Of a DNA stretch of 64,000 nt, positions 16,236 through 47,227 are shown one piece after another. The stretch is from Mizuhopecten yessoensis (taxonomy: Eukaryota). Each line of letters starts with the position of its first letter. The first letter of the stretch is position 1. The stretch covers positions 164,514-228,513 of the forward strand of contig NW_018408904.1 in NCBI RefSeq assembly GCF_002113885.1. The letters are read 5' to 3'. Below the pieces are notes generated by a model. That model had not been told where the DNA came from. It saw only the letters and a list, made by a program, of their open reading frames with translations, and did not search any database. The position numbers and the translations under genes were made by a program.

Positions 16236-17519
16236 TCACATGCCTTTAACAGAATGATAGAAGACAAGGCCCATCTCCATTATGGTTATCATGATACAGA
16301 TGGAGAAATTCCACCTGTCAATCGCGTGACTCACTATCTGCCAGGTCAGTATAGGGCGCCGGTCAATGTCCTCCGACACAACAGCGTGATGTGTGATACC
16401 ATCCGTCCCAGTGACACCCAGATTCGTCTTTGCCCTTGGAGACATGCTTTCTGGCGTTTTTCCTGTGAGGACGTCTTTTGTGTTGCAATTACTTTTGTAT
16501 GTTCGCCAAGTCACCAACATGGTTAAACATCGGAGATGGCAAGGTATGTCCCTGGTGTCACTTCGATGGTGGTAATTCAAGGATAGAATAGTACACGTGC
16601 ATACTATGACGTTATTGGCGAGATGTATACAGAGAATAATGCTTACAACGGGAACATCTGTGGACAATGGAGGTAACTGATCCATGACGATAGTCATGAA
16701 GATTGCAAGAGACAGAAGTACAGTGATGGAGTAGCTTGCCTTCTCCCCACACTCAGCTGGAAGGAAAAACACAAACAAGTTCATACAGATCAGGAAGGCA
16801 ATGGGGATGAACAGATTCAGAAGTAAAAACTCTGGTCGACGTGACAACTGTATGGATAAATCAACATACCGAGATGCGTTATTTCCTGCAACAATAAACT
16901 TTGCGGTGAGGTTCAACGCGTCCACAGTCCATTGACCATTATCCACCAGTTGGTCCAAATAAACATGTGACGGGACGGAAATCACTTCGCCCAAACTGTA
17001 ACCTAGGTGACTGATCATCAGGTGACAAGTGTGAGAGTCGAATGGAAAATATTTGATAAATGGTTTACACGTGCTCTCGAGATAAGTAGCGAAGAGCAAC
17101 ATCGCTAAGCCTTCCGAGGAGTACTGAACGAGAAGCATGTCCTTCTCTTTGCTTAGGAAGCCGTAGCTGTCCGCTGGGTTCACCAGTACCATGGGCGGAA
17201 CCCACACGTCGAGCAGGGGGAGGTTTACCACTGTGATGTTGTCGTATTCTTCACTGTCCCAACGTATGTACTCATCCGTCCACTGCAGCATGAATAAAAG
17301 GTGTGTTCCTAAAACACTCTCCACGATATTAAACTCTTTCAACATGTAGAAGTATAAGCTTATATGTACCAACAACGGATCATTTTGATTTCGAAGAGGA
17401 CGAGTAGACTTTGTATAATTCTGTAAAAGGTTACGTTTTAACCGTGTCATATTCTCATAGGATTCTCCGTTTACATTCGAACATAAAAGAAACACGGAGA
17501 TTAAAGATAGCACCAACAT
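16236..17519 (-). CDS. Intronless nicotinic acetylcholine receptor-like (Cys-loop ligand-gated cation channel) subunit, non-alpha type, paralog 1, 427 aa
   Basis: Signal peptide; RP..N, WTDEYIRW, VWVP motifs; Cys-loop CKPFIKYFPFDSHTC (C-x13-C); four TM segments; GEK before M2; W..VSHAIDR before M4; no vicinal CC in loop C. Confidence 0.95.
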   Translation of the reverse strand: MLVLSLISVFLLCSNVNGESYENMTRLKRNLLQNYTKSTRPLRNQNDPLLVHISLYFYMLKEFNIVESVLGTHLLFMLQWTDEYIRWDSEEYDNITVVNLPLLDVWVPPMVLVNPADSYGFLSKEKDMLLVQYSSEGLAMLLFATYLESTCKPFIKYFPFDSHTCHLMISHLGYSLGEVISVPSHVYLDQLVDNGQWTVDALNLTAKFIVAGNNASRYVDLSIQLSRRPEFLLLNLFIPIAFLICMNLFVFFLPAECGEKASYSITVLLSLAIFMTIVMDQLPPLSTDVPVVSIILCIHLANNVIVCTCTILSLNYHHRSDTRDIPCHLRCLTMLVTWRTYKSNCNTKDVLTGKTPESMSPRAKTNLGVTGTDGITHHAVVSEDIDRRPILTWQIVSHAIDRWNFSICIMITIMEMGLVFYHSVKGM

Positions 17520-17559
17520 GGTAACGGATAGATCACACGTAACTTTCTATATCTCAGCA

Positions 17560-20500
17560 GTTAGTAACCAATTATTCACCTGTGATTATCTCCTCAGATT
17601 GTAACTGATGGTTCACCTGTGGATGTCTCCTCAGATTGTAACCGATTATTCACCTGTGATTATCTTATCAGATTGTAACTGATGGTTCACATGTGAATGT
17701 CTCCTCAGATTGTATCTGATGGTCCACCTGTGGATGTCTCCTCAGATTGTAACCGATTATTCACCTGTGATTATCTTATCAGATTGTAACTGATGGTTCA
17801 CATGTGAATGTCTCCTCAGATTGTATCTGATGGTCCACCTGTGGATGTCTCCTCAGATTGTAACCGATTATTCACCTGTGAATGTCTCCTCAGATTGTTA
17901 CTGATGGTTCACCTGTGATTATCGCCTCAGATTGTTCTCCTCAGATTGTAACCGAATATTCACCTGTGATTATCGCCTCAGATTGTTCTCCTCAGATTGT
18001 AACCGAATATTCACCTGTGATTATCGCCTCAGATTGTAACTGATAGTTCACCTGTGATTATCTCCTCAGATTGTAACAGATTATTCACCTGTGAATGTCT
18101 CCTCAGATTGTTACTGATGGTTCACCTGTGATTATCGCCTCAGATTGTAACTGATAGTTCACCTGTGATTATCTCCTCAGATTGTAACAGATTATTCACC
18201 TGTGAATGTCTCCTCAGATTGTACCTGATGGTTCACCTGTGATTATCGCCTCAGCTTGTAACCGATTATTAACCTGTGATTATTTCCTCAGATTGTAACT
18301 GATGGTCCACCTGTGGATGTCTCCTCAGATTGTAACCGATTATTCACCTGTGAATGTCTCCTCAGATTGTACCTGATGGTTCACCTGTGATTATCGCCTC
18401 AGCTTGTAACCGATTATTAACCTGTGATTATTTCATCAGATTGTAACTGATGGTCCACCTGTGAATGTCTCCTCATATTGTAACTGATGGTTCACCTGTG
18501 ATTATCTCCTCAGATTGTAACAGATTATTCACCTGTGAATGTCTCCTCAGATTGTACCTGATGGTTCACCTGTGATTATCGCCTCAGATTGTTCTCCTCA
18601 GATTGTAACCGAATATTCACCTGTGATTATCGCCTCAGATTGTAACCGATTATTAACCTGTGATTATTTCCTCAGATTGTAACTGATGGTCCACCTGTGA
18701 ATGCCTCCTCAGATTGTAACCGATTATTCACCTGTGATTATCTCATCAGATTGTAACTGATGGTTCACATGTGAATGTCTCCTCAGATTGTAACTTATGG
18801 TTCACCTGTGATTATCGCCTCAGATTGTTCTCCTCAGATTGTAACCGAATATTCACCTGTGATTATCGCCTCAGATTGTAACTGATAGTTCACCTGTGAA
18901 TGTCTCCTCAAATTGTAACCGATTATTCACCTGTGATTATCGCCTCAGATTGTTCTCCTCAGATTGTAACCGAATATTCACCTGTGATTATCGCCTCAGA
19001 TTGTAACCGCTTATTAACCTGTGATTATTTCCTCAGATTGTAACTGATGGTCCACCTGTGATTATCTCCTCAGATTGTAACTGATGGTTCATCTGTGAAT
19101 ATCTCCTCAGATTGTAACCGATTATTCACCTGTGATTATCTCATCAGATTGTAACTGATGGTTCACATGTGAATGTCTCCTCAGATTGTAACTTATGGTT
19201 CACCTGTGATTATCGCCTCAGCTTGTAACCGATTATTAACCTGTGATTATTTCCTCAGATTGTAACTGATGGTCCACCTGTGATTATCTCCTCAGATTGT
19301 AACCTATGGTCCACTTGTGATTATCTCCTCAGATTGTAACTGATGGTTCACCTGTGATTATCTCCTCAGATTGTAACAGATTATTCACCTGTGAATGTCT
19401 CCTCAGATTGTACCTGATGGTTCACCTGTGATTATCGCCTCAGATTGTAACCGATTATTTACCTGTGATTATTTCCTCAGATTGTAACTGATGGTCCACC
19501 TGTGGATGGCTCCTCAGATTGTAACTGATAGTTCATCTGTGAATGTCTCATCAGATTGTAACCGATTATTCACCTGTGAATGTCTCCTCAGATTGTTACT
19601 GATGGTTCACCTGTGATTATCGCCTCAGCTTGTAACCGATTATTAACCTGTGATTATTTCCTCAGATTGTAACTGATGGTCCACCTGTGAATGCCTCCTC
19701 AGATTGTAACCGATTATTCACCTGTGAATGTCTCCTCAGATTGTAACCGATTATTCACCTGTGATTATCTCCTAAGATTGTAACAGATAGTTAATCTGTG
19801 AATGTCTCCTCAGATTGTAACTGATGGTTCACCTGTGATTATCGCCTCAGATTGTAACCGATTATTAACCTGTGATTATTTCCTCAGATTGTAACTGATG
19901 GTCCACCTGTGAATGTCTCCTTAGATTGTAACTGATGGTTAACCTGTGATTATTTCATCAGATTGTAACTGATTGTTCACATGTGATTATCGCCTCAGAA
20001 TGTAACTGATTATTCATCTGTGAATGTCTCCTTAGATTGTAACTGATGGTTAACCTGTGATTATTTCATCAGATTGTAAATGATGGTTCACCTGTGGATG
20101 TCTCCTCAGATTGTAACCTATGGTCCACCTGTGAATGTCTCCTTAGATTGTAACTGATGATTCACCTGTGAATGTCTAATCAGATTGTAACCGAATGTCT
20201 CCTCAGATTATAACTGATGGTTCACATGTGATTATCTCCTCCGATTGTAACTGATGATTAACCTGTGATTATCTCCTAAGATTGTAACAGATAGTTAATC
20301 TGTGAATATCTCCTCAGATTGTAACTGATGGTTAACCTGTGATTATTTCATCAGATTGTAACTGATGGTTCACCTGTGATTATCGCCTCAGATTGTAACT
20401 GATTATTCATCTGTGAATGTCTCCTCAGATTGTAACTGATGGTTAACCTGTGATTATCTCCTCAGATTGTAACTGATGATTCACCTGTGAATGTCTCCTC

Positions 20501-20830
20501 AGATTGTAACTGATAGTTCATCTGTGAATGTCTCCTCAGGATGTAACAGATAGTTCACCTGTGATTATCCCCTCAGATTGTAACTGATGGTTCACCTGTG
20601 AATGTCTCCTCAGATTTTAACTGATGGTTCACCTGTGATTATCGCCTCAGATTGTAACTGATAGTTCACCTGTGAATGTCTCCTCAGATTGTAACTGATT
20701 ATTCTCCTGTGAATGTCTCCTCAGATTGTAACTGATGGTTCACCTGTGAATGTCTCCTCAGATTGTAACTGATAGTTCACCTGTGATTATCTCCGAAGAT
20801 TTTAACCGCCGGTTTACACGTGAGTGTCTC
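17560..20830. repeat. 37-bp minisatellite (TTCACCTGTGATTATCTCCTCAGATTGTAACTGATGG), about 88 units, directly upstream of gene 1 ATG
   Basis: Tandem periodicity; most units carry CACCTG; a recurring short variant (cagattgttctcct) marks higher-order duplications. Confidence 0.96.
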
Positions 20831-21004
20831 TTCAGATTGTTTCTGGTGGTACCGGTGTCTAATTTTGTTCATAGCTCAGATTGTAAATGTAGGGTTGATA
20901 CGTGAGTGGCAGGTGTATCGGTCTTCTTTATTAGTTCCGAACTAAATCTACATTTCCCACATTAATCTGTACATCATAAACCGTAAAACGGTTTTCCAAG
21001 AGAA

Positions 21005-21320
21005 AGAACTGTCGGCTTAAAACGAATATGCTACATTCCATTAACTGTAATCCATTTATATGGTATAAAACATTATTGTGTATTGTCTTGCCTTTAACAG
21101 AATCACTTTAGAGAGACCACAAACAGGGGAATGGTAGGACAAATCAAATAACGATGTTCGTCGTTGAGATACAGACAAATAAAGAGGAGATAAACATTTG
21201 ACAAGTGTGTAAATAGGCCTCAATACGTTACTATGTTACATTACGTGTGGTGAGTTACTTGTGTAAATAATGGCATCTCCGTTAATGGTCTGCAATGTAT
21301 ATTGATTCGTATCACACGGA
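21005..21320 (-). promoter_or_regulatory. Conserved upstream block of gene 1, homologous to about 45440-45730 upstream of gene 2
   Basis: Reverse complement of 21238-21292 matches 45466-45520 at 45/55 nt without gaps; atattcgttttaag is also shared. Regulatory role is inferred only. Confidence 0.55.
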
Positions 21321-22089
21321 GACCATCGATATCAGTACCATAACACCTAATGTCTCGGTGAGTTTACACTAGTGTGAAGTCCATCTGGCGTTTTGCTGTT
21401 CTTACACTTTCTTAAAAAATAGCAAAAAAATGGAAGTTTGCTGAAATAAATTATGTTGACCTATCCAAAAAGCCAGAGGTTTCGACGTTAACAAGAGAGA
21501 ATAAGCAGATAAATATCCGATCGTGTGTCCGACTGTTCGTTCATCTATGTTACATCAATATTATCCGTATCAAGGTAAAGAAGCAGGGTTCCATTGCTCT
21601 TGTCAAACTCGCAATCGTTTTGTGTAGAATTGAATATTTAACTATAACCACGTATATTTTTTTATAAGTATTATATAATAATAACTTTTGAACACAATCA
21701 GGACTTGAAAACATATTTTGAGAGCTTTCGAAAACGTCCGTTTCCATTGTCAAGCAAAGAATGCAAATGACCGGTGTCTCGACCCTAAACCCGCTGAAAA
21801 CAACTCACTTAGTCTCAGGGGGCCAAATCAGTAAAGTCAACTGTCAAAAATCATAGAGACAGTTCACCCAATTGCACTCTAATACTGCAGGTAGTCAGGG
21901 GGACGGGTAACATGTTTACCCATTCCGCCCCTTATTGAACTCAGACACCCCTTGTATATTTGTTTCTTGGGTCCATTTTGACCCGAATGGTTCATAAAAA
22001 ACGTAGAAAAAAACATTCGGGGTATTCACATATACATGTTGTCAGGGTCTGTTTGATATGCATTCAAATGGGCCGAAAGAAACAAAAAG

Positions 22090-23822
22090 TGTTATATATC
22101 GGTAGACGATGTGGCCAGTGTCGTCTACAGGTAGACAGTGGACCATGTTCTATGTACAGGTACACGTTTGGCCCAGTGTTATGTATCGGTAGATGATGTT
22201 ACTAGTATCGTTTACAGGTAGACATTGGACCATGTTTTATGTACAGGTACACGTTTGGCCCAGTGTTATGTATCGGTAGATGATGTTACCAGTATCGTCT
22301 ACAGGTAGAAAGTAGACCATGTTTGATGTACCGGTACAAGTTTGACCTTGTTTCATGTATCGATAGACGATGTGACCAGTATCGTCTACAGGTAGACAGT
22401 TGACCATGTTCTATGTACAGGTACACGTTTGGCCCAGTGTTATGTACCGGTAGACGATGTGGCCAGAATCGTCTACATGTAGACAGTGGACCATGTTCTA
22501 TGTACAGGTACACGTCTGGCCCAGTGTTATGTACCGGTAGACGATGTGACCAGTATCGTCTACAGGTAGTAGGTAGGCCATGTTATATGTACAGGTACAC
22601 GTTTGGCCTAGTGTTATGTACCGGTAGACGATGTTACTAGTATCGGCTACAGGTAGACAGTGGACCATGTTCTATGTACCGTTACACGTTTGGCCCAGTG
22701 TTATGTACCGGTAGACGATGTGACCAGAATCGTCTACAGGTAGACAGTGGACCATGTTCTATGTACAGGTACACGTTTGGCCTAGTGTTATGTACCGGTA
22801 GACGATGTGGCCAGAATCGTCTACAGGTAGACAGTGGACCATGTTCTATGTACAGGTACACGTTTGGCCTAGTGTTATGTACCGGTAGACGATGTGGCCA
22901 GAATCGTCTACAGGTAGACAGTGGACCATGTTCTATGTACAGGTACACGTTTGGCCTAGTGTTATGTACCGGTAGACGATGTGGCCAGAATCGTCTACAG
23001 GTAGACAGTGGACCATGTTCTATGTACAGGTACACGTTTGGCCTAGTGTTATGTACCGGTAGACGATGTGGCCAGAATCGTCTACAGGTAGACAGTGGAC
23101 CATGTTCTATGTACAGGTACACGTTTGGCCTAGTGTTATGTACCGGTAGACGATGTGGCCAGAATCGTCTACAGGTAGACAGTGGACCATGTTCTATGTA
23201 CAGGTACACGTTTGGCCTAGTGTTATGTACCGGTAGACGATGTGGCCAGAATCGTCTACAGGTAGACAGTGGACCATGTTCTATGTACAGGTACACGTTT
23301 GGCCTAGTGTTATGTACCGGTAGACGATGTGGCCAGAATCGTCTACAGGTAGACAGTGGACCATGTTCTATGTACAGGTACACGTTTGGCCTAGTGTTAT
23401 GTACCGGTAGACGATGTGGCCAGAATCGTCTACAGGTAGACAGTGGACCATGTTCTATGTACAGGTACACGTTTGGCCTAGTGTTATGTACCGGTAGACG
23501 ATGTGGCCAGAATCGTCTACAGGTAGACAGTGGACCATGTTCTATGTACAGGTACACGTTTGGCCTAGTGTTATGTACCGGTAGACGATGTGGCCAGAAT
23601 CGTCTACAGGTAGACAGTGGACCATGTTCTATGTACAGGTACACGTTTGGCCTAGTGTTATGTACCGGTAGACGATGTGGCCAGAATCGTCTACAGGTAG
23701 ACAGTGGACCATGTTCTATGTACAGGTACACGTTTGGCCTAGTGTTATGTACCGGTAGACGATGTGACCAGAATCGTTTACAGGTAGTAGGTAGGCCATG
23801 TTCTATGTACAGGTACACGTTT
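22090..23822. repeat. 87-bp satellite made of three 29-bp subunits, about 20 units
   Basis: ggtagacgatgtggccagaatcgtctaca / ggtagacagtggaccatgttctatgtaca / ggtacacgtttggcctagtgttatgtacc; essentially identical units at about 22740-23760. Confidence 0.97.
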
Positions 23823-25150
23823 GACGTATGATGGTATGACGTCAGAATGGATCACTGTTAAATCCGGAGTTCGACAAGGTGGGGTGTTGTCAAGTTTTCT
23901 CTACCAAGTGTTTATTGACAGCCCACTTTGTACCCTAGAAAAGAGGAACCAAGGAGCTAGAATCGTGTCTATACCGGTAGGGAATCCTACTCTCGCTGAT
24001 TATGTTGCCTTAATTGCTATAACACCAGCCTCGCTACAAAATATGTTAAATATGTGTCACACCTACAGCACGACATGGCAGTATAGATTCTATAGTTCCA
24101 AATGCTCTATTATCGTGATAGGCAGATTCATTCCAAGGGAACCCTCGTTTTCCTGGTCAATAGGAACCAATCCTATTCAAATTGCATCATCATATATACA
24201 CCTCGGCGTCCCAGTTTCCAATAGGATGAACAATGGCGAACGGGTTGCTAAAGCATGAGTCATCCATGTTGTTCTTGGAATTAATGCAAAGTCGACTTCC
24301 ATAAATGCTTTAGTGAAAGTTAATCTATATAAGAAAGTCGTCATTCCATCAATTCTCTTCGGATGCGAACATTGGTTGCAAATCAACCAGACGGACATCC
24401 GTGATTTAAATACGTTTCATCATTACCCTGCCAAACTTATCATAAACATAAGGAAAGGGACAGGGTCAGACATTGCAGAAAAGTATATTGGGGATCCAGC
24501 GAATAGGCGCCACTTTCGACCAACGGAAACTCATCTTCCTAGCACAACTGATTCACCTAGATTGTAGATACATTGTAAAAACAATGGTCTTAGTCCGTCT
24601 ATATAGCTACATTATTGGCGAGGAAGACGGAAATACAACACAACAACGTGGTTTCATCCCGGATATAGTTGCAATACTTCACAAATACAACCTAAGATCC
24701 TATCTCGATAAGTAACAGTTTAAATTCCCGGGAAAAGGTGAGTGGAAACGTGTCGTAAAGAGAGCCATTAGCCGTTTTGAAAATATTGCCTTAAGAACGA
24801 GGCNGTTTGCGCCAGGCGTGAGTTTCTCAATTTACTCAATCGAGCAGTTTAGTTCCGCCTGGAACTGTCCATTAATGCAATGGACATTTCTAAACTTCAT
24901 ACATTTTTGTACTAACTATTAACACTGTATCATATCTGAGGAATTACATATGTATACTATATATTCAAAACTTAAACTCCACTTTATAGTATCAGCAAGA
25001 AAAAATAACGTCATGAAAACCTATACTTGTCAAAATCATGTGCAAGCCCGGGCTTATTGGCTTACATGGTAGCTACGCGCCTGGAGGCTATCCAACGATG
25101 ATGACTTTCTTAGATGTAGACGAATTCATTCGACGTACCATCCCTATGTT
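23823..25150 (+). mobile_element. Decayed 5'-truncated LINE, RT C-terminal half and downstream region
   Basis: SGVRQGGVLSSFLYQVFID, GNPTLADY (xADD box mutated), YIHLGV, LYKKVVIPSILFGCEHW; stops and frameshifts; single N at 24804. Confidence 0.85.
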
Positions 25151-25734
25151 CTGTGGGCTGCTTGCAAATTTACGAAGCATATTAGACAAGTGTACTTCCT
25201 GTGTAATGGTTTGACCTGTGTTAATTCACATCAAATCCGACGATGAACCTGTTGTCAGATAGACGTCCAAGACACGACCCGCCATATATGTGTGTCAATC
25301 AACCAGGCCACTGAAAACCCGCTTCTTGACTAATGCTATGCTTGAGTATGGACCACAGGTTTATAGTTATCTAAATGACATGGAAGACGAGGATTTCCTC
25401 TTTGCACTTTTTTTTTGTCCCAGACTTGCCAGACCACCCCACCAGAGACGATTTCAGATTTAATTGTGCAGCCTTCATCATGGAAGCTATGCACATCTAT
25501 TATAGCAATAACTGAGCAGGCACTGCTACTCATCTATTTGCTGAACCACAATTGTGTTTTCTTACCAATGATATATAAAGTAATATAACATATACTGAAC
25601 TGTGATGACATATGATTATCATTCGAAATCGTATGGTCTGAGAAAGCTTATTTGGCTATTATCCTATCACTAATTATTGATTAATAAGTATGTGTAAATA
25701 CTAGCTGGATATTGGTGGTAGCGCATAACAGTGA

Positions 25735-37334: not shown

Positions 37335-40300
37335 CACACAGAAGTATAAGTAATAATTATTTTTCAGTCTAGGCATGATTTTCTTTGCATTCGAAATGAT
37401 ACATGAAATACATATGAAAGGTGTTTAACGATAACATTCGCTTTTAGCCAAAGTATGTTTTTCTTTACTTAACGACAGAATGCCAAGGTATACATGGTTA
37501 CAAAACATACCTATTGCATACGTATTTGGAGAGTGATCTCGCATGACAAGCATACCGAACACAGAGAGTAACATAAACATGTATGTATAAAATACATCAT
37601 AAACATAATAGTACAAGAAAAATTAACTTAAGTTAAATTTAACTTAACAGACANNNNNNNNNNNNNNNNNNNNNNNNNNNNNNNAAAATGAACTTAAGTT
37701 AAATTTAACTTAACAGACACATACTGACGGAGATGAGCCAATGTTACCTTGAATGGGATTACATTGGTGCTGAGTCAATCTACCACTTATGTAACACTTA
37801 TTGATTAAGTTTAATAATACATCTATGTTGTACAACATCAGCAATCATACTACTATTATACAGACAGACAGAAGTAAAAGTAATGATTCGTTTTTAGCGA
37901 TGTCATGCTTTTCTTAGAATTCGAAATATACCTGAAATACATATGTGAGGTATATAACGATAATATTCACTTTTATCCAAAGTGCGTTTTTCTTTTCTTA
38001 AAGGCAAAATGAATATATTTTCCAAGATTATTTAGTTCCTTAACATTATTTATACTTAACAGTTGCACAAGTTTGAAAACGCTTGGTGATTTATAATAGT
38101 ACCTTTTAATATACCTTTGTCTAATTTCTATATAAAATGGACATTGCAGTATAAAATGGAACTCGTCTTCAATTTCAAAACTTTGGCAACGTTCACATAT
38201 TCTGCGTCTTTTATCAATGTTGTGATAGCGGCCATTTTCGATTTTTAACTGGTGTGATGACAATCTAATACTGGCTATAGATTTTTTATATATATTATCA
38301 AGAGGTTTCAGTAAATAATATTGCATGCAAAAATGATCAATTAGATGTTTGTATAGGTCACCTCTGGCAGCATTTATAATTCTTGCTCTCATTTCCTGGG
38401 TGTAACAATCTTTAAATCGTTGTTCTACTACTTTGTACATATTTCCATTTATAGCATCACTAGTCCAAAAGTAAGATAAACCAAGTTTATCTAGTTCTTG
38501 TTTAATATTGTTTATCCAATCATCATTCATTATTAATCGCTCTTCTAAACATGTGGCCAATATACAATTTTTGGATTCTTTTAATTTTAACCAGTATTTT
38601 ATAACTTTTAACTTTCTATTTATGTAACGTGACTGTCTACCAAGCTCGTAATATACAAAATCAGTACCTGTACTTTTTTTGACACCAAGCAATCGTTTAC
38701 AAAACCCAGAATGGAGCTTTTCTATCTCTGGTGCTTTGTGAAAGCCCCATATCTCGCTTCCATACTCGAGTATGCTGTTGACATATGTATCAAACACTGA
38801 ACATNNNNNNNNNNNNNNNNNNNNNNNNNNNNNNNNNNNNNNNNNNNNNNNNNNNNNNNNNNNNNNNNNNNNNNNNNNNNNNNNNNNNNNNNNNNNNNNN
38901 NNNNNNNNNNNNNNNNNNNNNNNNNNNNNNNNNNNNNNNNNNNNNNNNNNNNNNNNNNNNNNNNNNNNNNNNNNNNNNNNNNNNNNNNNNNNNNNNNNNN
39001 NNNNNNNNNNNNNNNNNNNNNNNNNNNNNNNNNNNNNNNNNNNNNNNNNNNNNNNNNNNNNNNNNNNNNNNNNNNNNNNNNNNNNNNNNNNNNNNNNNNN
39101 NNNNNNNNNNNNNNNNNNNNNNNNNNNNNNNNNNNNNNNNNNNNNNNNNNNNNNNNNNNNNNNNNNNNNNNNNNNNNNNNNNNNNNNNNNNNNNNNNNNN
39201 NNNNNNNNNNNNNNNNNNNNNNNNNNNNNNNNNNNNNNNNNNNNNNNNNNNNNNNNNNNNNNNNNNNNNNNNNNNNNNNNNNNNNNNNNNNNNNNNNNNN
39301 NNNNNNNNNNNNNNNNNNNNNNNNNNNNNNNNNNNNNNNNNNNNNNNNNNNNNNNNNNNNNNNNNNNNNNNNNNNNNNNNNNNNNNNNNNNNNNNNNNNN
39401 NNNNNNNNNNNNNNNNNNNNNNNNNNNNNNNNNNNNNNNNNNNNNNNNNNNNNNNNNNNNNNNNNNNNNNNNNNNNNNNNNNNNNNNNNNNNNNNNNNNN
39501 NNNNNNNNNNNNNNNNNNNNNNNNNNNNNNNNNNNNNNNNNNNNNNNNNNNNNNNNNNNNNNNNNNNNNNNNNNNNNNNNNNNNNNNNNNNNNNNNNNNN
39601 NNNNNNNNNNNNNNNNNNNNNNNNNNNNNNNNNNNNNNNNNNNNNNNNNNNNNNNNNNNNNNNNNNNNNNNNNNNNNNNNNNNNNNNNNNNNNNNNNNNN
39701 NNNNNNNNNNNNNNNNNTATATTTCCACACTTCATTATTTCTTATGTTTCCCCCGTTTCTAAAAACCATGACTTTTGTTTTATCAATGTTGACTTCCAGA
39801 TCCCATTTTCTAGAGTAACTGTGTAAAGAATCTAACATGTTTTGCAATGCAGCTGGACTATCAGCGAAAAAAACCATATCATCAGCATACATTAGCAGGA
39901 AAAGGTTAAGCATCTGTAAATCAATACTTGGACAATTATCATTAATAAAATTAATTTCAAAATCATTCACATACAAAGAAAACAACACAGGTGACAATAT
40001 TTCCCCTTGTAAGAGACCGGTATAATTAGGGAAACAATGACTTAATTGACCCTCAAATTTTACACAGGATTTGACATTATCATACAAAGATAATAATATT
40101 TTTAAAAATTTTCCACGAATACCTTGGTGTATTAATTTACTCCACAGGTTCCCTCTATTAACAAAATCAAATGCTTTTTTTAAATCTATAAAGCAACAGT
40201 AAAGTCTCTCTTTTTTACGCAATTTCTTGTTAATTAATGTTTGTAAAACAAATATGGCGTCAATGGTTGAACTGCCTTTTCTAAAACCAAACTGAGCATC

Positions 40301-41068
40301 TGTTATTATACAATTTTCTTTTTCCCATGTCATAATTCTATTATTCAGGATTGATGTAAATAATTTACCAAAACAGCTTACAAGTGATATACCACGATAA
40401 TTGTTAGTGTCGTTAATACAGCCTTTCTTAAAAACAGGAACAATACATGCTTGTGACCAAGATTCAGGGAAAAACCCAGATATAAAAATAGCATTAAACA
40501 ACCGTTCCAAATATGGCACCAGAATATGCTTTCCTTGAATAAAAACTCTGTGTGTCATTAAGTCTTCAATACAACTTTTGTTTGATTTCAGGTTTAATAA
40601 CAAATACTATTCATTACGGTCAAACGGTATCGCATATCAGCTCTGTGTGTCAGAACTGGTCAGGTAAAACTCCGGACACTCATAAAATTGTTATTTACCT
40701 GTTCTGTTACCTTGGAGCCAAACCCATTCTTGACAGCCTATATATAGCTAACGGTCGCTGTAATACTGTCAGTGTGTAACACGAATTGTGAAATTGTATA
40801 ATCTTGATTATTGTGATGAGAAATTACAGATATATACACAGTGTACATTATCGCATACAAGCCTTCCGTATTTTTGTCATTCCGTAGTTTTGATCTACAA
40901 ATGATACCAAATCGCACAGTTGTGCGGAGAGAAGCGCACAAAGGGGCGAACGATTGCCAAATCGTACAGTTGTGCGCACCATGTGTGGACGACATGCGGA
41001 CGGTGTGTGAACGATGTATGCACGGTGTGCGCACGCTATTTTTGATGCGTTGTGCGGTCCCACAACTG
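36886..41068. mobile_element. Non-autonomous TIR DNA element with TA target duplication (Tc1/mariner-like), carrying a nested LINE
   Basis: TA|cagttgtgggatcg ... cggtcccacaactg|TA; removing it with one TA restores the minisatellite unit tgttactaatgtattaacta; shared subterminal cggtgtgtgaacg motifs. Confidence 0.85.
36977..40600 (-). mobile_element. 5'-truncated LINE with open RT (N gap 38805-39717), C-terminal CCHC motif, long 3' UTR and (TTGAA)n tail
   Basis: NNYRGISLVS, AQFGFRKG, CCFIDLKKAFD, LLQGEILSP, LLMYADD, RICERC..EDEFHFILQC; stop at 37973; minus-strand AATAAA followed by cttgaattgaattgaattg at 36977-37001. Confidence 0.92.
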
Positions 41069-41290
41069 TACTAATGTATTAACTATGTTACTACTAATTA
41101 GTTGATATTGTGACTGTTATGTTACTAATGTATTAACTATGTTACTGTTGTAACTAATTAGTTGATATTGTAACTATTATGTTACTTATGTAACAACTAT
41201 GTTGCTATTGTTAGTAATTAGTTTCTATTGTAACTGTTATGTGACTTATGTAACAATTATGTTGCTATTGGTATTAATAGTTTACTACTG
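41069..41290. repeat. 40-bp (2 x 20 bp) minisatellite, right part
   Basis: Same units as 36105-36885, degenerating distally. Confidence 0.88.
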
Positions 41291-41664
41291 AAAATAGTTC
41301 GCTACTGTATCATGTTCATGCTAATATTGTATTGTCTCAATATTGTGTTAATTCTTTGCTAGAAACATGGTTGAGGTAACATTACAGATCATGATTTGAG
41401 CTCAACATACGGCGAAAACATAAAAATAAAACAAAATGAAGAGAACAGCACATTAACATAGACAATGGTATTACGAAATGTATAGTTGGTATGTATACCC
41501 GCAGCATTATAAGGGGGGTTCAGGTCACTGAAATCGATGTGGTATCCAGCCGTTCAATGCGGGACATTTACAAAATATAACGTTTTTATTTGAAAAATAA
41601 CAGAAATATGAAAGAGAAGTCTGGAACGAAGGCCACGTTCAGCGACAGACGGTAAACGAGCAAG

Positions 41665-41927
41665 TATGGTGGCTGATTAGTGCCATGTTCTCTTTTTCGC
41701 GGTCGAAAGCGAAAAAGCGCCAAAATAACGCGAAAAAGCGCCGAAGCTTAAAGCGAAAAATCGAAGTTTTAGCCATGTCGCATTCGCTTTTTTTGCGTGC
41801 ATTTTGTCGCTTTTTTCGCTTTTTCGTGTTTAAAAAACCGCGAAAACGCGAAAAATAGGTGTTTTATTTTCGCTTTTTCGCATTTTTGACCGCGACAAAG
41901 GGAAAATGTCACCAATCAGCCACCATA
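41665..41927. mobile_element. About 260-bp foldback MITE bounded by TA
   Basis: tatggtggctgatt ... aatcagccaccata termini; left arm rich in gcgaaaa, right arm in ttttcgc. Confidence 0.8.
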
Positions 41928-42664
41928 GGTATGCCCACTGATTGACGCGGCAGGCGTTTTTGCCATTATCGTCCGATTTCTCAGTGTTTTCGTTGTTTTG
42001 TTATTTCGCTACGAAAAACAAGTTTAGTGGTATACACAGACGATTAACCAATCAGAAAGCTTGAAATGTGCGTCATTATAACGTCAAAATCTCCAACGTC
42101 ATGAAATGAGGACCCATTCACAATGCTTTTAATTCACAAGGTATTTAATGGTTTTCCGTTGAACACCACCTAATATTTCACAAGTTTCGCAGATTACGGA
42201 TTTACTCAACTGTACCGTTTCTGCTATTATTTCTTAAGATTTGCTTACAGAAATGGTATCATTTGTGTAGATAAATAAATACTTTAGTATATGTGACAAA
42301 TGCCAAACAACCACTTATCCCAACGTCGCTTCATCTGTATATGTCCTGAAGCCAATAGGAATAGGCACTAGTGCCATTCTGATAGTCTATTCCAAAAGTG
42401 ATATACATTGTATTTCTACTTTCTGATGAGCATTTATTTTGCATGAAGATGCCTTAAGAAAAGACCTACATAAATTGCTGTATTTGAATAAAAAGCGTTT
42501 GACCCCATGATAGATATTTGGGATCAAATGAAGGGCAGAGTAATAACATATATTTCGTTTCTCTGTTCCAATATCCATTCAAAACATTTTAGTCAAGATC
42601 ATTTATTCAGAAAGTAACATCCATTAAAAATAATTAAATCAAGAATAAGTTGTTTTTAATTTAA

Positions 42665-43385
42665 GGGCATATAATGTTCCTTTGCCCTGACAGAAGTGAG
42701 TTGGTAATAGGGCCTAAACTGTTCCTTTATCCTGACAGAAGTGAGTTGGTAATATGGCCTATTATGTTCCTTTGTCCTGACAGAGGTGAGTTGGTAATAG
42801 GGCTTATAATGTTCCTTTGTCCTGACAGCAGTGAGTTGGTAATAGGGCATATAATGTTCCTTTGCCCTGACAGAAGTGAGTTGGTAATAGGGCATATCAT
42901 GTTCCTTTGTCCTGACAGATGTGAGTTGGTAATAGGGCCTAAACTGTTCCTTTGTCCTGACAGCAGTGAGTTGGTAATAGGGCATATAATGTTACTTTGT
43001 CCTGACAGAAGTGAGTTTGTAATAGGGCCTATCCTGTTCCTTTGTCCTGACAGAAGTGGGTTGGTAATAGGGCCTAAACTGTTCCTTTATCCTGACAGAA
43101 GTGAGTTGGTAATATGGCCTATACTGTTCCTTTGTCCTGACAGCAGTGAGTTGGTAATAGGGCATATCATGTTCCTTTGTCCTGACAGACGTGAGTTGGT
43201 AATAGGGCGTATATATAATGTTCCTTTGTCCTGACAGCAGTGAGTTGGTAATAGGGCATATCATGTTCCTTTGTCCTGACAGAAGTGGGTTGGTAATAGG
43301 GCCTAAACTGTTCCTTTGTCCTGACAGGAGTGAGTTGGTAATAGGGCCTATACTGTTCCGTTGTCCTGACAGAAGTGAGTTGGGA
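42665..43385. repeat. 45-bp minisatellite (TGTTCCTTTGTCCTGACAGAAGTGAGTTGGTAATAGGGCATATAA), first block
   Basis: Tandem periodicity; 15-codon periodic ORFs. Confidence 0.95.
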
Positions 43386-44171
43386 TGTAGTTTGCTGAAT
43401 ATGACTCTGTTGGTCAGGGAGTTTTACGGCTGGCTTTTCACCAGAGACTCTAGACACTAAAGTACATGGACTGTCATTTCTGAAAACTCTTTCCTCGTTT
43501 TTCAAATTAGCTGAGGTTCTAATACAAAAAAGTCAAACAAGAAGAGACAATGTCTGTGCATGTTGGAAGGATCAATATATAATAGGGCCTATAATGTTCC
43601 TTTGTCGTGACAGAAGTGAGTTGGGATGTAGTTTGCTGAATATGACTCTATTGGTCAGGTAGTTTTACGGCTGGCTTTTCACCAGAGACTCTAGACACTA
43701 AAGTACATGGACTGTCATTTCTGAAAACTCTTTCCTCGTTTTTCAAATTAGCTGAGGTTCTAATACAAAAAAGTCAAACAAGAAGAGACAATGTCTGTGC
43801 ATGTTGGAAGGATCAATATATAATAGGGCCTATAATGTTCCATGAAGATGCCTTAAGAAAAGACCTACATAAATTGCTGTATTTGAATAAAAAGCGTTTG
43901 ACCCCATGATAGATATTTGGGATCAAATGAAGGGCAGAGTAATAACATATATTTCGTTTCTCTGTTCCAATATCCATTCAAAACATTTTAGTCAAAATCA
44001 TTTATTCAGAAAGTAACATCCATTAAAAATAATTAAATCAAGAATAAGTTGTTTTTAATTCACATAAAGTTAACCCTCATTTTGGCCATAAAACTTTGTT
44101 AAAATGTCAATGAAAAGAGAATAATAAATGTACGTTGTGCTTTCCCTATGAACTGAATAGTAATCAATATA

Positions 44172-44665
44172 TAATAGGGCCTATAATGTTCCTTCGTCCT
44201 GACAGAAGTGAGTTGGTAATATGGCCTATTATGTTCCTTTGTCCTGACAGAGGTGAGTTGGTAATAGGGCTTATACTGTTCCTTTGTAATGACAGAAGTG
44301 AGTTGGTAATAGAGCCTATACTGTTCCTTTGTCCTGACAGCAGTGAGTTGGTAATAGGGCATTTAATGTTCCTTTGTCCTGACAGCAGTGAGTTGGTAAT
44401 AGGGCATTTAATGTTCCTTTGTCCTGACAGAGGTGAGTTGGTAATAGGGCTTATAATGTTCCTTTGTCCTGACAGCAGTGAGTTGGTAATAGGGCATATA
44501 ATGTTACTTTGTCCTGACAGAAGTGAGTTGCTAATAGGGCTTGTACTGTTCCTTTGTCCTGACAGAAGGGAGTTGGTAATAGGGCATATAATGTTACTTT
44601 GTCCTGACAGAAGTGAGTTGCTAATAGGGCTTGTACTGTTCCTTTGTCCTGACAGAAGTGAGTTG
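44172..44665. repeat. 45-bp minisatellite, second block
   Basis: Same unit as 42665-43385. Confidence 0.95.
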
Positions 44666-44943
44666 GGATGTAGTTTGCTGAATATGACTCTATTGGTCAG
44701 GTAGTTTTACGGCTGTCTTTTCACAAGAGACTCTAGACACTAAAGTACATGTACTGTCATTTCTGAAAACTCTTTCCTCGTTTTTCAAATTAGCTGAGGT
44801 TCTAATACAAAAAGGTCAAACAAGAAGAGACAATGTCTGTGCATGTTGGAAGGGGCGATATAAAGTCTCATTAAATTAATTCTCCTTCCGCGGACATTAT
44901 CTCCGTTTCCTCCAAAAACACACGCAATTTCAGAGCAATTATT

Positions 44944-45294
44944 CGTATGACACCGTTTACCTCACCATCACAGTTACTCAAGCCACTCTACATATATCGT
45001 ATTCCTTGTGTATTTTTGTATTCATATTGGTGATTAAACTACATTGTCTCAATCTATTAAAAGGTGTTTTATCCATATAGCCTTATAAGTTGAACAACGT
45101 CATTTATTTCATTAAACCATATAAAACTTTCCTTGAAAATAGTTATTTATTTGAACATGCTTTCATTCAGGTCTTGTGATAATAAAGACGATGTCGGTTA
45201 AAAGGACTGATTGACGCCTGAAGGACCACCTGTCTAATACATACACTAGTGAGATAAAGTCAACAAGAGGACCTTTCCTAGATATAACTACTGA
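44944..45294 (+). repeat. About 345-bp dispersed repeat, second copy at 60026-60367
   Basis: Both start cgtatgacaccgtttacctcaccatcacagttactcaagcc and end cctagatataactactga, colinear in between. Confidence 0.85.
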
Positions 45295-45789
45295 AATGTT
45301 CTACTCCAGTGTTTAGATTCTCCCTTATGACTTACCTGCAGAAATCAGATTGTATCAAACAATACCTCTAATATACAATTTATCTCGCGTACTGGTAAAC
45401 CAGTTTTGTACGGTATAACCGAAAACGCGCACATTTGCTACAAATCAATGCATATTCAACCTTATCAGACAATCAACGGCGATGCCATTACTTACACAAA
45501 CACTACACCTCACGTAATGTTGATTGACTCCAATGAACATACTTGTCCGAGCTTTTCCCCACTGATTTGTTAACACGTTGTTTGTTATGTACTTATTGCC
45601 GGTCCTTCCTTTGACTGTTAAAAGTAATTCATTTTAAAGGCCAGGATGATTCTGCTCAATTAGGCTTTGCCCTAAATTAATAGATTGCAATAAAGTGATA
45701 GCAAGTCGTATATTCGTTTTAAGTCACCTTTTTTTCAATAGTCATACAGTCACATAGGATCTGTTGGATGAGACAGTCACGAGTGCTGG

Positions 45790-45935
45790 CCCATCAGTAA
45801 GTGTTTGAGGAGAAACAAGGTGACCCATCAGTAAGTGTTTGAGGAGAAACAAGGTGACCCATCAGTAAGTGTATGAGGAGAAACAAGGTGACCCATCAGT
45901 AAGTGTATGAGGAGAAACAAGGTGACCCATCAGTA
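45790..45935. repeat. 34-bp minisatellite (CCCATCAGTAAGTGTWTGAGGAGAAACAAGGTGA), 4 units plus a partial, ending 2 nt before gene 2 ATG
   Basis: Direct reading; homologous to the reverse complement of the 37-bp unit upstream of gene 1. Confidence 0.92.
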
Positions 45936-45937
45936 TC

Positions 45938-47227
45938 ATGTTAATGCTGCGTGCTATCATCGTGTTACTTTTATGTTCAAATGTAACTGGGAAGTCATAT
46001 CAGAATTTAACACGTTTAAAACTTAACCTTTTACAGAACTATACAAAGTCTAATCGTCCGCTTCGAAATCAAAATGATCAGCTGTTGGTACGTGTAAGCG
46101 TATATTTCCATATGTTAAAAGAGTTTAATATCGTGGAGAGTGTTTTAGGAACACACCTTTTCTTCACGCTGCAGTGGACGGATGAGTACATACGTTGGGA
46201 CAGTGAAGAATACGACAACATCACAGTGGTAAACCTCCCCCTCCTCGACGTGTGGGTTCCGCCCATGGTACTGATGAACCCAGCCGGCAGCTTCGGCTTC
46301 CTAAGCAAAGAGAAAGACATGCTTCTTGTTCAGTATTCTTCGAAAGGCTTGGCATCATTGGTCTTCGCTGCCTATCTCGAGAGCACGTGCAAACCATTTA
46401 TCAAATATTTTCCATTCGACTCTCACACTTGTCACCTGATGATAAGCCATCTAGGCTACAGTATGGGCGAAGTGACCTCCGCCCCGTCACATGTTTATGT
46501 GAATAATTTTGTGGATAACGGACAATGGATTGTGGACGAATTGAACCTCACAGAGAAATGGTTAATTCCTGGAGTTAACGAATCTCAGTATGTTGATTTA
46601 TCCATACAGTTGTCACGTCGACCAGAATTTTTACTTCTAAATCTGTTCATCCCCATTGCCTTCCTGATCTGTATGAATTTGTTTGTGTTTTTCCTTCCAG
46701 CTGAGTGTGGGGAGAAGGCAAGCTACTCCATCACTGTACTTCTGTCTCTGGCAATCTTCATGACTATCGTCATGGATCAGTTACCTCCATTGTCCTCAGA
46801 TGTTCCCGTTGTAAGCATTATTCTCTGTATGCATCTCGCCAATAACGTCATAGTATGCACGTGTACTATTCTATCCCTGAACTACCACCATCGAAGTGAC
46901 ACCAGGGACATACCTTGCCATCTCCGACTTTTAACCATGTTGGTGACTTGGCGAACATACAAGAGTAATTGCAACAAAATAGGAGACGTCCCAAAGAGAA
47001 CAGCAAAAGAAAACATGTCCCCAGGGGCTGACGAGAAGAATAGCAACATAACAGAGACGGATGATATCACACACCGCGCTGATGTGTCGGAGGACATTGA
47101 CCGGCGTCATATACTGACCTGGCAGAAAGTGAGTCACGCGATTGACAGGTGGAATTTCTTCATCTGTATCATGATGACAATACTTGAGAGTGGCCTTGTC
47201 TTTTACCATTCATTTCAAGACATGTAA
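45938..47227 (+). CDS. Intronless nAChR-like Cys-loop subunit, non-alpha type, paralog 2, 429 aa
   Basis: Same motifs as paralog 1 (Cys-loop CKPFIKYFPFDSHTC, GEKASYSITVLLSL M2); colinear over the full length. Confidence 0.95.
   Translation: MLMLRAIIVLLLCSNVTGKSYQNLTRLKLNLLQNYTKSNRPLRNQNDQLLVRVSVYFHMLKEFNIVESVLGTHLFFTLQWTDEYIRWDSEEYDNITVVNLPLLDVWVPPMVLMNPAGSFGFLSKEKDMLLVQYSSKGLASLVFAAYLESTCKPFIKYFPFDSHTCHLMISHLGYSMGEVTSAPSHVYVNNFVDNGQWIVDELNLTEKWLIPGVNESQYVDLSIQLSRRPEFLLLNLFIPIAFLICMNLFVFFLPAECGEKASYSITVLLSLAIFMTIVMDQLPPLSSDVPVVSIILCMHLANNVIVCTCTILSLNYHHRSDTRDIPCHLRLLTMLVTWRTYKSNCNKIGDVPKRTAKENMSPGADEKNSNITETDDITHRADVSEDIDRRHILTWQKVSHAIDRWNFFICIMMTILESGLVFYHSFQDM

What the first reader, a model, noticed from the sequence alone, without database searches (positions are those of the whole stretch)
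16236..47227. Pair of nAChR-like channels lacking the acetylcholine site and diverging in the ligand-binding loops: candidate orphan/chemosensory receptors
Seen: both proteins lack the loop C vicinal cysteines, the loop B Trp (ISHLGYS where nAChRs have GSWTY), the loop A Tyr (PPMVLVN/PPMVLMN) and the loop D Trp (HLLFMLQW/HLFFTLQW), yet keep the Cys-loop and the cation-type GEK-M2. Between paralogs, 69 consecutive residues spanning M1-M2 (YVDLS...LPPLS) are identical, while mature-ectodomain substitutions cluster at beta1 (HISLYFY/RVSVYFH), loop D, loop A (VNPADSY/MNPAGSF), loop E (EGLAMLLFAT/KGLASLVFAA), loop B-F (SLGEVISV..LDQL/SMGEVTSA..VNNF) and loop C (AKFIVAGNNASR/EKWLIPGVNESQ); the signal peptide and M3-M4 loop also differ. 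Established: molluscs have expanded, often intronless nAChR-like families, and cephalopod chemotactile receptors are ACh-insensitive nAChR derivatives. Inference: these may be receptors for non-ACh ligands under diversifying selection on the binding pocket.
Basis: partly seen in the sequence, partly recalled or inferred. Interest (0 to 1): 0.78.

Follow-up and report, generated by a model that had tools for sequence, protein, structure and literature searches.

The report
Scallop orphan nAChR-like channel gene pair
Two intact, intronless scallop genes encode nicotinic-receptor-like cation-channel subunits that lack the acetylcholine site, but so do all 50 of their closest relatives in this genome, and their differences show relaxed constraint and gene conversion, not proven adaptive tuning.

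Summary
Two intact single-exon ORFs, A (16236-17519, minus strand, 427 aa) and B (45938-47227, plus strand, 429 aa), encode complete Cys-loop channel subunits that are 83% identical. Both keep the Cys-loop and the cation-type GEK M2. Both lack the loop A Tyr, loop B Trp, loop C Tyr/Cys-Cys and loop D Trp. The 69-residue identical run is exact. The assembly gaps lie in a retroelement between the genes, not in either gene.

Loss of the ACh site is not special to this pair: none of the 50 closest paralogs in this scallop genome has W55, Y93 or the vicinal cysteines. The expansion is published (Jiao 2019).

The identical TM block reflects strong purifying selection (omega 0.03-0.06 across Pecten, Ylistrum and Argopecten orthologs) plus A-B gene conversion (dS 0.086 against 0.34-0.59 in the ectodomain).

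Replacements do cluster in the binding loops, but loop omega is 0.39, the same as in orthologs. Site and ectodomain branch-site models find no positive selection.

One real residue remains: copy A alone has replaced canonical pocket positions that B and all orthologs conserve. RNA support is trace-level.

The parts
16236..17519 (-). Gene A: intronless CDS, 427 aa, a complete pLGIC subunit (signal peptide 1-18, ectodomain 19-217, M1-M3 229-317, disordered ICD about 347-387, MA/M4 393-426). This is the derived copy at pocket positions.
45938..47227 (+). Gene B: intronless CDS, 429 aa, paralog of A (83% aa, 89% nt identity). This is the conservative copy, which keeps the pocket states shared by the Pecten, Ylistrum and Argopecten orthologs.
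16500..16868 (-). Gene A codons 218-340 (pre-M1 to post-M3 helix): low-divergence tract against B (2.7% nt; dS 0.086 for codons 218-322). Purifying selection plus inferred gene conversion.
46589..46957 (+). Gene B codons 218-340: partner of the low-divergence TM tract.
17160..17339 (-). Gene A codons 61-120 (beta2 to loop A): second low-divergence tract (3.9% nt, dS 0.055). In its cleanest stretch, about codons 61-112, the only two amino-acid differences are the W55- and Q57-equivalent loop D positions (75, 77).
46118..46297 (+). Gene B codons 61-120: partner of the second low-divergence tract.
17575..20840 (.). 37-nt minisatellite (about 88 units) starting 56 nt upstream of A's ATG.
45790..45935 (.). 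34-nt minisatellite (4.3 units) ending 2 nt before B's ATG.
14795..15790 (.). 28-nt tandem array (about 36 units) 0.45 kb downstream of A's stop. About 70% alike to the array downstream of B, so it belongs to the duplicated unit.
47719..49814 (.). 28-nt tandem array (about 75 units) 0.5 kb downstream of B's stop, homologous to the array downstream of A.

Best explanation
A and B are two paralogous subunits of a cation-selective pentameric ligand-gated channel. They belong to a Pectinidae-specific orphan clade within the published bivalve expansion of intronless nAChR-like genes.

The canonical ACh site (aromatic box plus vicinal cysteines) was already absent in the clade's ancestor, and it is absent from all 50 closest paralogs in this genome. 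The channel is therefore very unlikely to be gated by ACh in the canonical cation-pi way (inferred).

The pair arose in the Mizuhopecten lineage, together with a third copy on another contig, by a DNA-level inverted segmental duplication. The duplicated unit included the flanking minisatellites.

Since then the whole gene has been under purifying selection. This is extreme in pre-M1 to M3 and weaker in the binding loops and the ICD. Two tracts (about codons 61-120 and 218-340) were later homogenised between A and B by gene conversion. Both effects together produce the striking 'identical pore, divergent loops' picture.

Copy B keeps the ancestral pectinid pocket. Copy A has replaced several pocket residues with other aliphatic ones (F75L, S140M, V142L, P211A, L209I). 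I cannot tell whether that is retuning for another hydrophobic ligand or relaxation because A no longer contributes a binding face.
For: - Domains, fold and pore motifs.
- Family context: at least 98 mostly single-ORF pLGIC matches in the 988-Mb scallop genome. Jiao 2019 reports 138 nAChR genes in M. yessoensis, many intronless and in arrays, with few keeping the full principal site.
- Census of the 50 closest paralogs: W55 0/50, Y93 0/50, vicinal CC 0/50.
- Single orthologs found in Pecten maximus, Ylistrum balloti and Argopecten irradians at 64-72% identity, with the same signal peptide and the same pocket losses.
- A, B and C form a species-specific clade with 100% support and unresolved internal order.
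- Purifying selection: A-B omega is 0.35 overall, 0.27 in the ectodomain and 0.10 in the TM block. Ortholog TM omega is 0.03-0.06.
- Conversion: A-B dS is 0.086 in the TM block and 0.055 in codons 61-120, against 0.47-0.59 elsewhere. Synonymous-site Fisher p=0.0005-0.0009, with flat controls (A-Pmax p=0.55; A-C and B-C TM dS about 0.28). Silent-site heterogeneity permutation p<=0.007 for A-B and non-significant for orthologs. Nucleotide divergence is bimodal, 17-19% against 2.7-3.9%.
- No positive selection.
- Duplication unit.
- A-specific pocket change: A-B 7/12 (p=0.0015), A-orthologs 7-8/12 (p=0.03-0.04), B-orthologs 3-4/12 and ortholog pairs 3-5/12 (non-significant). At ortholog-invariant sites, 3 of 6 pocket positions differ against 6 of 102 others (p=0.007).
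Against: - Function is entirely inferred. There is no electrophysiology and no ligand.
- Expression is barely detectable: one read pair in 12.4 M reads of one RNA-seq run, one partial read in another, and a few low-depth contigs in runs whose RNA status is only guessed. The tissues are unknown, so the genes could be silent or narrowly expressed.
- Gene conversion is inferred from synonymous-site heterogeneity with only three paralogs. No donor-recipient polarity or tract ends are proven.
- Whole-gene branch-site tests gave marginal signals (A p=0.036, B p=0.018, uncorrected). I discount these because they rest on multi-nucleotide codon changes, and for B the sites lie outside the ectodomain.
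- Pocket positions were mapped by sequence alignment to alpha7, not on a pentamer model.
- Linkage and orientation of A and B cross two assembly gaps.
Confidence: 0.72

Rival explanations
1. Copy A, or the pair, is a chemosensory or orphan receptor whose pocket was adaptively retuned to a non-ACh, probably hydrophobic, ligand. This would be analogous to cephalopod chemotactile receptors, and it is the first reader's reading.
For: - No ACh box, an intronless gene and an all-aliphatic pocket in A (LMVLMLLYIAGS at the 12 canonical positions).
- Pocket replacement is specific to the A lineage and hits sites that are invariant in B and three orthologs (p=0.007).
- Inside the cleanest stretch of the homogenised tract, about codons 61-112, the only two amino-acid differences are the W55- and Q57-equivalents.
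- S140M has posterior 0.77-0.90 in branch-site runs.
- CRs show that such a transition exists in molluscs (PMC11526382), and a CR-like clade is reported to include bivalves (PMC13174522).
Against: - Omega is below 1 in the loops (0.39, p=0.007 against neutrality), the same as between orthologs.
- M2a is not better than M1a, and ectodomain branch-site p is 0.15 for A.
- The A-specific changes are conservative aliphatic swaps.
- S140M is a two-nucleotide codon change, a known source of branch-site false positives.
- RNA support is only trace-level, with unknown tissue.
Confidence: 0.15
2. A and B are accessory or structural subunits that co-assemble with other family members and contribute no agonist site. 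A's pocket changes would then be local relaxation of a face that no longer binds anything.
For: - Both the principal residues (Y93, W149, Y188, Y195, CC) and the complementary residue (W55) are missing.
- The pore and gating elements are extremely conserved while the pocket drifts in A.
- Loop omega is well below 1 but higher than in the core, as expected for relaxed constraint.
Against: - In B and all three orthologs, six of the twelve pocket positions are invariant. The pocket is therefore constrained in the clade, which argues that it does something.
- No partner subunit is identified.
Confidence: 0.1
3. The genes are decaying retrocopies or unexpressed relics with no function.
For: - RNA evidence is only trace-level.
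- Public gene models start at the internal Met59 and lack the signal peptide.
- The genes sit in a repeat-rich neighbourhood.
Against: - Both frames are intact.
- Omega is 0.35 between the paralogs and 0.07-0.17 to orthologs that diverged at dS above 1.
- The signal peptide and all gating motifs are conserved across four scallop genera.
Confidence: 0.03

Closest known systems
Bivalve-expanded intronless nAChR-like genes (Jiao et al. 2019, BMC Genomics, PMC6896357)
   Same: Intronless LBD plus TM architecture. Clustered duplicates. Most members lack the full ACh principal site. M. yessoensis is one of the genomes surveyed (138 genes). [quoted passage not shown]
   Different: That paper gives no gene-level analysis of this clade. 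The pectinid orthology, the inverted segmental duplication with minisatellite flanks, the A-B conversion tracts and the A-specific pocket replacement are described here for the first time, as far as I could find.
Cephalopod chemotactile receptors (CRs; van Giesen 2020, Allard 2023, Kang 2023, as summarised in PMC11526382)
   Same: nAChR-derived, intronless cation channels without the ACh-coordinating residues. The pocket is lined by hydrophobic residues.
   Different: CR pocket sites are reported to be under strong diversifying selection, whereas here omega is below 1 and site models find none. CRs form a predominantly cephalopod clade (PMC13174522), and membership of this scallop clade was not tested. 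No sensory expression or ligand is known for A or B.
Alpo4, an orphan lophotrochozoan nAChR-like receptor from Alvinella pompejana (eLife 2023, PMC10338036)
   Same: A lophotrochozoan orphan Cys-loop receptor that lacks the loop C vicinal disulfide, is not gated by ACh or serotonin, and has a hydrophobic groove at the orthosteric site.
   Different: Alpo4 keeps the aromatic cage (F103, W159, Y199, Y205, W65). A and B have lost every one of those except the Y151-equivalent Tyr.
Human alpha7 nAChR (for example PDB 7KOO, 9NX0)
   Same: It is the best sequence and fold match (phmmer E about 1e-39; Foldseek TM 0.70-0.77). It shares the Cys-loop, the GEK -1' ring, the 9' Leu, a 20' acidic residue, the pre-M1 Arg and the M2-M3 Pro.
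   Different: Identity is only 22-25%. W55, Y93, W149, Y188, C190-C191 and Y195 are all replaced by non-aromatic residues, and the ICD is much shorter.

Membership tests
Cys-loop / pentameric ligand-gated ion channel superfamily | Neur_chan_LBD plus Neur_chan_memb domains with four TM helices | tested here: met
   Pfam E about 2-3e-34 (LBD) and 6e-15 / 5e-16 (TM) for A and B. The AF2 model has M1-M3 and MA/M4 helices with mean pLDDT 81.5. Foldseek top hits are nAChRs at TM 0.70-0.80.
Cys-loop / pentameric ligand-gated ion channel superfamily | Signature disulfide loop C-x13-C with an FPFD core | tested here: met
   CKPFIKYFPFDSHTC at residues 151-165 in both proteins.
Cation-selective nAChR/5-HT3 branch | A -1' Glu (GEK) with no Pro-Ala-Arg anion motif, a 9' Leu gate and a 20' acidic ring | tested here: met
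   The M2 reads GEKASYSITVLLSLAIFMTIVMDQ in both. Ion selectivity itself was not measured.
ACh-gated nicotinic receptor (functional sense) | Aromatic box: loop A Tyr93, loop B Trp149, loop C Tyr188 and Tyr195, loop D Trp55 | tested here: not met
   A has V, L, I, S and L at these positions. B has M, L, L, S and F.
ACh-gated nicotinic receptor (functional sense) | Alpha-type vicinal Cys190-Cys191 in loop C | tested here: not met
   A has A-G and B has P-G. No CC occurs within 45 residues before pre-M1.
Bivalve-expanded intronless nAChR-like family (Jiao 2019) | Single-exon gene, clustered duplicates, LBD-NTM architecture, mollusc lineage-specific clade | tested here: met
   Uninterrupted ORFs. 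At least 98 mostly single-ORF relatives in the genome. The clade nests among this scallop genome's own paralogs and two other bivalve proteins, apart from the alpha7-type references. Paper.
Cephalopod chemotactile receptors (CR) | Membership of the CR clade in a phylogeny | not tested
   No CR sequence could be obtained, and CR chains were not among the listed PDB hits. The literature places the CR clade mainly in cephalopods, with a broader 'CR-like' clade that includes bivalves.
Cephalopod chemotactile receptors (CR) | Binding-pocket sites under diversifying selection | tested here: not met
   Loop omega is 0.39. M1a vs M2a gives p=0.125 for the whole gene and 2dlnL=0 for the ectodomain. Ectodomain branch-site p is 0.15 (A) and 0.45 (B).
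Cephalopod chemotactile receptors (CR) | Expression in a sensory epithelium and gating by poorly soluble or hydrophobic ligands | not testable with these tools
   Only trace reads were found, in runs of unknown tissue.

The most novel reading that the evidence does not exclude
After a lineage-specific duplication, copy A was retuned to a new hydrophobic ligand through a handful of pocket substitutions (F75L, T/Q77M, S140M, V142L, L209I, P211A). Gene conversion kept its pore and gating machinery identical to B. In this reading the pair is a natural 'same channel, two pockets' experiment and a bivalve counterpart of cephalopod chemotactile receptors. The fast-evolving third copy, MyC, would be a further step in the same radiation.
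Probability: 0.15. Interest if true: 0.6.

Novelty: new member of a known kind. Interest (0 to 1): 0.3.

Why it matters
Bivalves carry more than 100 nAChR-like genes of unknown function, and none has been de-orphanised. This clade offers a tidy test case. It has single orthologs found in the three other scallop genera examined and a recent triplication in one lineage. One conservative copy (B) and one pocket-altered copy (A) share a practically identical pore, so any pharmacological difference between them must map to about 36 ectodomain residues, 7 of which sit at canonical pocket positions.

The more useful result for the scan is negative. The 'identical TM, divergent loops' pattern is not evidence of diversifying selection, and neither is loss of the ACh box. 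The first is produced by ordinary constraint plus gene conversion. The second is the norm for this family.

Tried and rejected
I did not attempt it another way. I used relative-rate counts against extant outgroups and likelihood models that output no ancestral sequences.
- A single-tract max-chi-square scan on silent sites showed significant heterogeneity but chose an uninformative tract (27-419 against the ends), because the signal-peptide end is very divergent. I relied on the pre-defined domain comparison and the binned profile instead.
- Whole-gene branch-site signals for A and B (p=0.036 and 0.018) were set aside. They would not survive correction for four tests and rest on multi-nucleotide codon changes.
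- Haplotig or assembly artefact was rejected: 11% nt divergence, dS 0.27, and flanks that do not align apart from the repeat arrays.
- Pseudogene status was rejected: omega is well below 1 and orthologs are conserved.
- Conversion of MyC from a divergent donor is judged unlikely, because no paralog closer than 39% aa exists apart from A and B.
- Loop C columns in the 53-sequence family alignment were unreliable, since the insect alpha7 CC misaligned. I scanned for vicinal cysteines directly instead.
- CR sequences could not be obtained, so no tree with CRs was built.
- A pentamer model and a distance-based pocket definition were not possible. Only a monomer model without coordinates was available.
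- The first IQ-TREE run failed on the thread count and was rerun.
- A word search of earlier scan notes for nAChR-like genes returned nothing.
Full report
WHAT IS THERE

The window holds two uninterrupted ORFs. A lies at 16236-17519 on the minus strand (427 aa). B lies at 45938-47227 on the plus strand (429 aa). Both score Pfam Neur_chan_LBD (E about 2-3e-34) and Neur_chan_memb, and they are 83% identical.

An AlphaFold2 model of A has mean pLDDT 81.5. It shows a signal helix, the alpha1 helix, the beta-sandwich, M1 to M3, a disordered intracellular loop (347-387) and an MA/M4 helix. Its best structural matches are alpha7, alpha4beta2 and muscle nAChR chains, at TM 0.70-0.80 and 20-25% identity.

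The assembly gaps flagged by the scan (37654-37684 and 38805-39717) lie in or beside a reverse-transcriptase-like ORF between the genes. They do not touch either CDS. Only the 28.4-kb spacing and the head-to-head arrangement depend on the scaffold being continuous there.

CHECK OF THE OBSERVATION

The phmmer alignment to human alpha7, the codon table and the position map confirm each stated loss:

| alpha7 position | Loop | A | B |
|---|---|---|---|
| W55 | D | L | F |
| Q57 | D | M | T |
| Y93 | A | V | M |
| W149 | B | L | L |
| Y188 | C | I | L |
| C190-C191 | C | A-G | P-G |
| Y195 | C | S | S |

- The Cys-loop (C151-x13-C165) is kept, and so is the Y151-equivalent Tyr.
- The M2 keeps GEK at -1', Leu at 9' and Asp at 20'.
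- The identical run is residues 218-286, exactly 69 residues.
- 26 of the 36 ectodomain differences fall in 75 loop residues, against 10 in the other 124 (p=3.7e-6).
- 7 of the 12 canonical pocket positions differ (p=0.0015).

CONTEXT

- The genome is 987.6 Mb in 82,659 contigs and is a scallop. Annotated homologues are from Mizuhopecten yessoensis and other Pectinidae.
- It contains at least 98 pLGIC-like matches, nearly all single open frames. This agrees with Jiao et al. 2019, who counted 138 nAChR genes in M. yessoensis. They described the intronless, tandem expansion and noted that few members keep the principal ACh residues.
- Among the 50 closest intact paralogs, none has the loop D Trp, the loop A Tyr or vicinal cysteines. 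About 30 keep the loop B Trp. Lacking the ACh site is therefore the norm in this family, and only loss of the loop B Trp is less common.
- One ortholog each was found in Pecten maximus, Ylistrum balloti and Argopecten irradians (64-72% identity). All are intronless, with the same signal peptide and the same pocket losses.
- A third Mizuhopecten copy (MyC, on contig C2356) and an older paralog (MyD) complete a 100%-supported clade. That clade nests among this genome's own paralogs and two other bivalve proteins, and is separate from the alpha7-type references.
- The order of A, B and C is unresolved (support 21-46).
- Homology between A and B covers the CDS (89% over 1,278 nt) and a 28-nt array downstream of each gene. 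Each ATG is preceded by a 34-37-nt minisatellite. The pair is therefore a DNA-level inverted segmental duplication.

WHY THE TM BLOCK IS IDENTICAL

There are two reasons.

1. Constraint. Across orthologs that differ at dS of about 1 or more, pre-M1 to M3 has omega 0.03-0.06. The same 69 residues are almost invariant in all four genera.
2. Gene conversion.
   - A-B synonymous divergence is 0.086 in this block and 0.055 in codons 61-120, against 0.47-0.59 in the rest of the ectodomain.
   - The synonymous deficit in the TM block is significant (Fisher p=0.0005-0.0009).
   - It is absent in A-Pecten (p=0.55) and in A-C and B-C (TM dS about 0.28).
   - Silent-site heterogeneity is significant for A-B (permutation p<=0.007) and not for ortholog pairs.
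   - Nucleotide divergence is bimodal, 17-19% against 2.7-3.9%.
   - Three-way site patterns are mosaic outside these tracts.

IS THE POCKET UNDER DIVERSIFYING SELECTION?

| Test | Result |
|---|---|
| A-B omega, binding loops | 0.39, below 1 (p=0.007) |
| A-B omega, rest of ectodomain | 0.15 |
| Loop omega, A-Pecten and B-Pecten | 0.37 |
| Overlap of A-B differences with ortholog-variable sites | odds ratio 4.6, p=1.6e-4 |
| M2a vs M1a, whole gene | 2dlnL=4.16, p=0.125; the only candidate site is residue 367 in the ICD |
| M2a vs M1a, ectodomain only | 2dlnL=0 |
| Branch-site, ectodomain | p=0.15 (A), 0.45 (B), 0.17 (A+B) |
| Branch-site, whole gene | p=0.036 (A), 0.018 (B), uncorrected |

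The codon models are my own implementation. Its M0 likelihood matches IQ-TREE's. The whole-gene branch-site signals rest on multi-nucleotide codon changes (140 TCN>ATG, 331, 356, 416), and for B the sites lie outside the ectodomain. Diversifying selection is therefore not supported, although six sequences give limited power.

WHAT SURVIVES

The pocket concentration is specific to copy A.

| Comparison | Pocket positions differing (of 12) | p |
|---|---|---|
| A vs B | 7 | 0.0015 |
| A vs Pecten | 7 | 0.042 |
| A vs Ylistrum | 8 | 0.027 |
| B vs orthologs | 3-4 | 0.5-0.8 |
| Ortholog vs ortholog | 3-5 | 0.47-0.79 |

- Restricted to ectodomain sites invariant in the three orthologs, 3 of 6 pocket positions differ between A and B, against 6 of 102 other sites (p=0.007).
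- The A-specific states are F75L, S140M and V142L at ortholog-invariant positions, plus L209I and P211A where one ortholog also differs. They give A an all-aliphatic pocket.
- In the cleanest stretch of the homogenised tract, about codons 61-112, the only two amino-acid differences are the W55- and Q57-equivalents.
- B is thus the conservative copy, and A has a remodelled pocket on an unchanged pore.
- Six of the twelve pocket positions are invariant in B and the orthologs. The pocket is therefore constrained in the clade and is not vestigial.
- I cannot decide whether A's changes are adaptive retuning or local relaxation, for example if A became an accessory subunit.

EXPRESSION

- No run on record as RNA holds gene A.
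- Two raw RNA-seq runs yielded one read pair and one partial read in about 12-13 million reads each.
- Small runs guessed to be RNA carried a 264-nt perfect contig over codons 28-115 and two contigs with 4-5 mismatches.
- This is trace-level support with unknown tissue. It neither proves silence nor shows function.
- The public gene models start at the internal Met59. Conservation of the upstream signal peptide in Ylistrum and Argopecten supports the full ORF.

COMPARISON WITH KNOWN SYSTEMS

The genes are members of the pLGIC superfamily and of the bivalve intronless nAChR-like expansion. They fail the defining features of an ACh-gated receptor. They resemble cephalopod chemotactile receptors in being intronless, ACh-box-less cation channels with a hydrophobic pocket. 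They do not show the pocket-directed diversifying selection reported for CRs (PMC11526382). Their clade membership could not be tested. A 2026 preprint reports a 'CR-like' clade that includes bivalves and other clades with pocket substitutions (PMC13174522). Alpo4, a solved orphan annelid receptor, lacks the vicinal disulfide but keeps the aromatic cage (PMC10338036), so A and B are further derived than Alpo4.

VERDICT

The pair is a new, well-behaved member of a known kind. Interest is modest, at 0.3. It rests on the A/B contrast as a clean substrate for de-orphanisation and on the fast-evolving third copy noted below.

Noticed in passing
L003:1501-2763 (G000:C2356:103037-104287, + strand), outside the window: The third species-specific paralog, MyC, is an intact 421-aa ORF. 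Its public model P0006 is a 336-aa truncation named alpha-9-II. It evolves at omega of about 0.85-1 or more, including in the TM helices. The branch-site test gives 2dlnL=23.9 (p about 5e-7) with omega2 4.6 on 41% of sites. Its frame would stay open in only 0.08% of neutral simulations with the same roughly 223 substitutions. It is therefore maintained by selection while changing very fast. No plausible conversion donor exists, because the next paralog is 39% identical.
   Followed up: partly
window 17575-20840 and 45790-45935: There are minisatellites directly upstream of both start codons: 37-nt units in about 88 copies before A, and 34-nt units in 4.3 copies ending 2 nt before B's ATG. The copy-number difference could affect the promoter or 5'UTR of the two paralogs. 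I confirmed their positions and copy numbers, but blastn did not align them.
   Followed up: partly
window 14795-15790 and 47719-49814: Homologous 28-nt tandem arrays (about 36 and 75 units, about 70% alike) lie 0.45-0.5 kb downstream of each stop codon. They mark the 3' edge of the duplicated unit.
   Followed up: partly
window 28241-29983 (- strand): An intronless 580-aa ORF encodes a BTB-BACK-Kelch (KLHL-type) protein between the two receptor genes. Pfam gives BTB 1.4e-24, BACK 7.4e-24 and Kelch_1 4e-22.
   Followed up: no
window 37973-40603 (- strand): A reverse-transcriptase-like ORF, with a YADD motif in the translation, is interrupted by the 38805-39717 assembly gap. The second gap (37654-37684) lies just downstream. 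It is probably a non-LTR retroelement. I did not scan it against Pfam.
   Followed up: no
window 22088-23823, 26929-28158, 42664-44666: Large tandem arrays (87-nt x 20, 24-nt x 51, 45-nt x 11-16) create long spurious ORFs on both strands between the genes.
   Followed up: no
window 50001-54000: This stretch has a strong strand compositional asymmetry (GC skew -0.45 to -0.52, AT skew +0.37 to +0.38), unlike the rest of the window.
   Followed up: no
P0001 / P0002 (public models of A and B): The public gene models for both genes begin at the internal Met59 (369 and 371 aa), so they lack the signal peptide, the alpha1 helix and beta1. The full ORF start is conserved in the Ylistrum and Argopecten orthologs, so the models look truncated.
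   Followed up: yes
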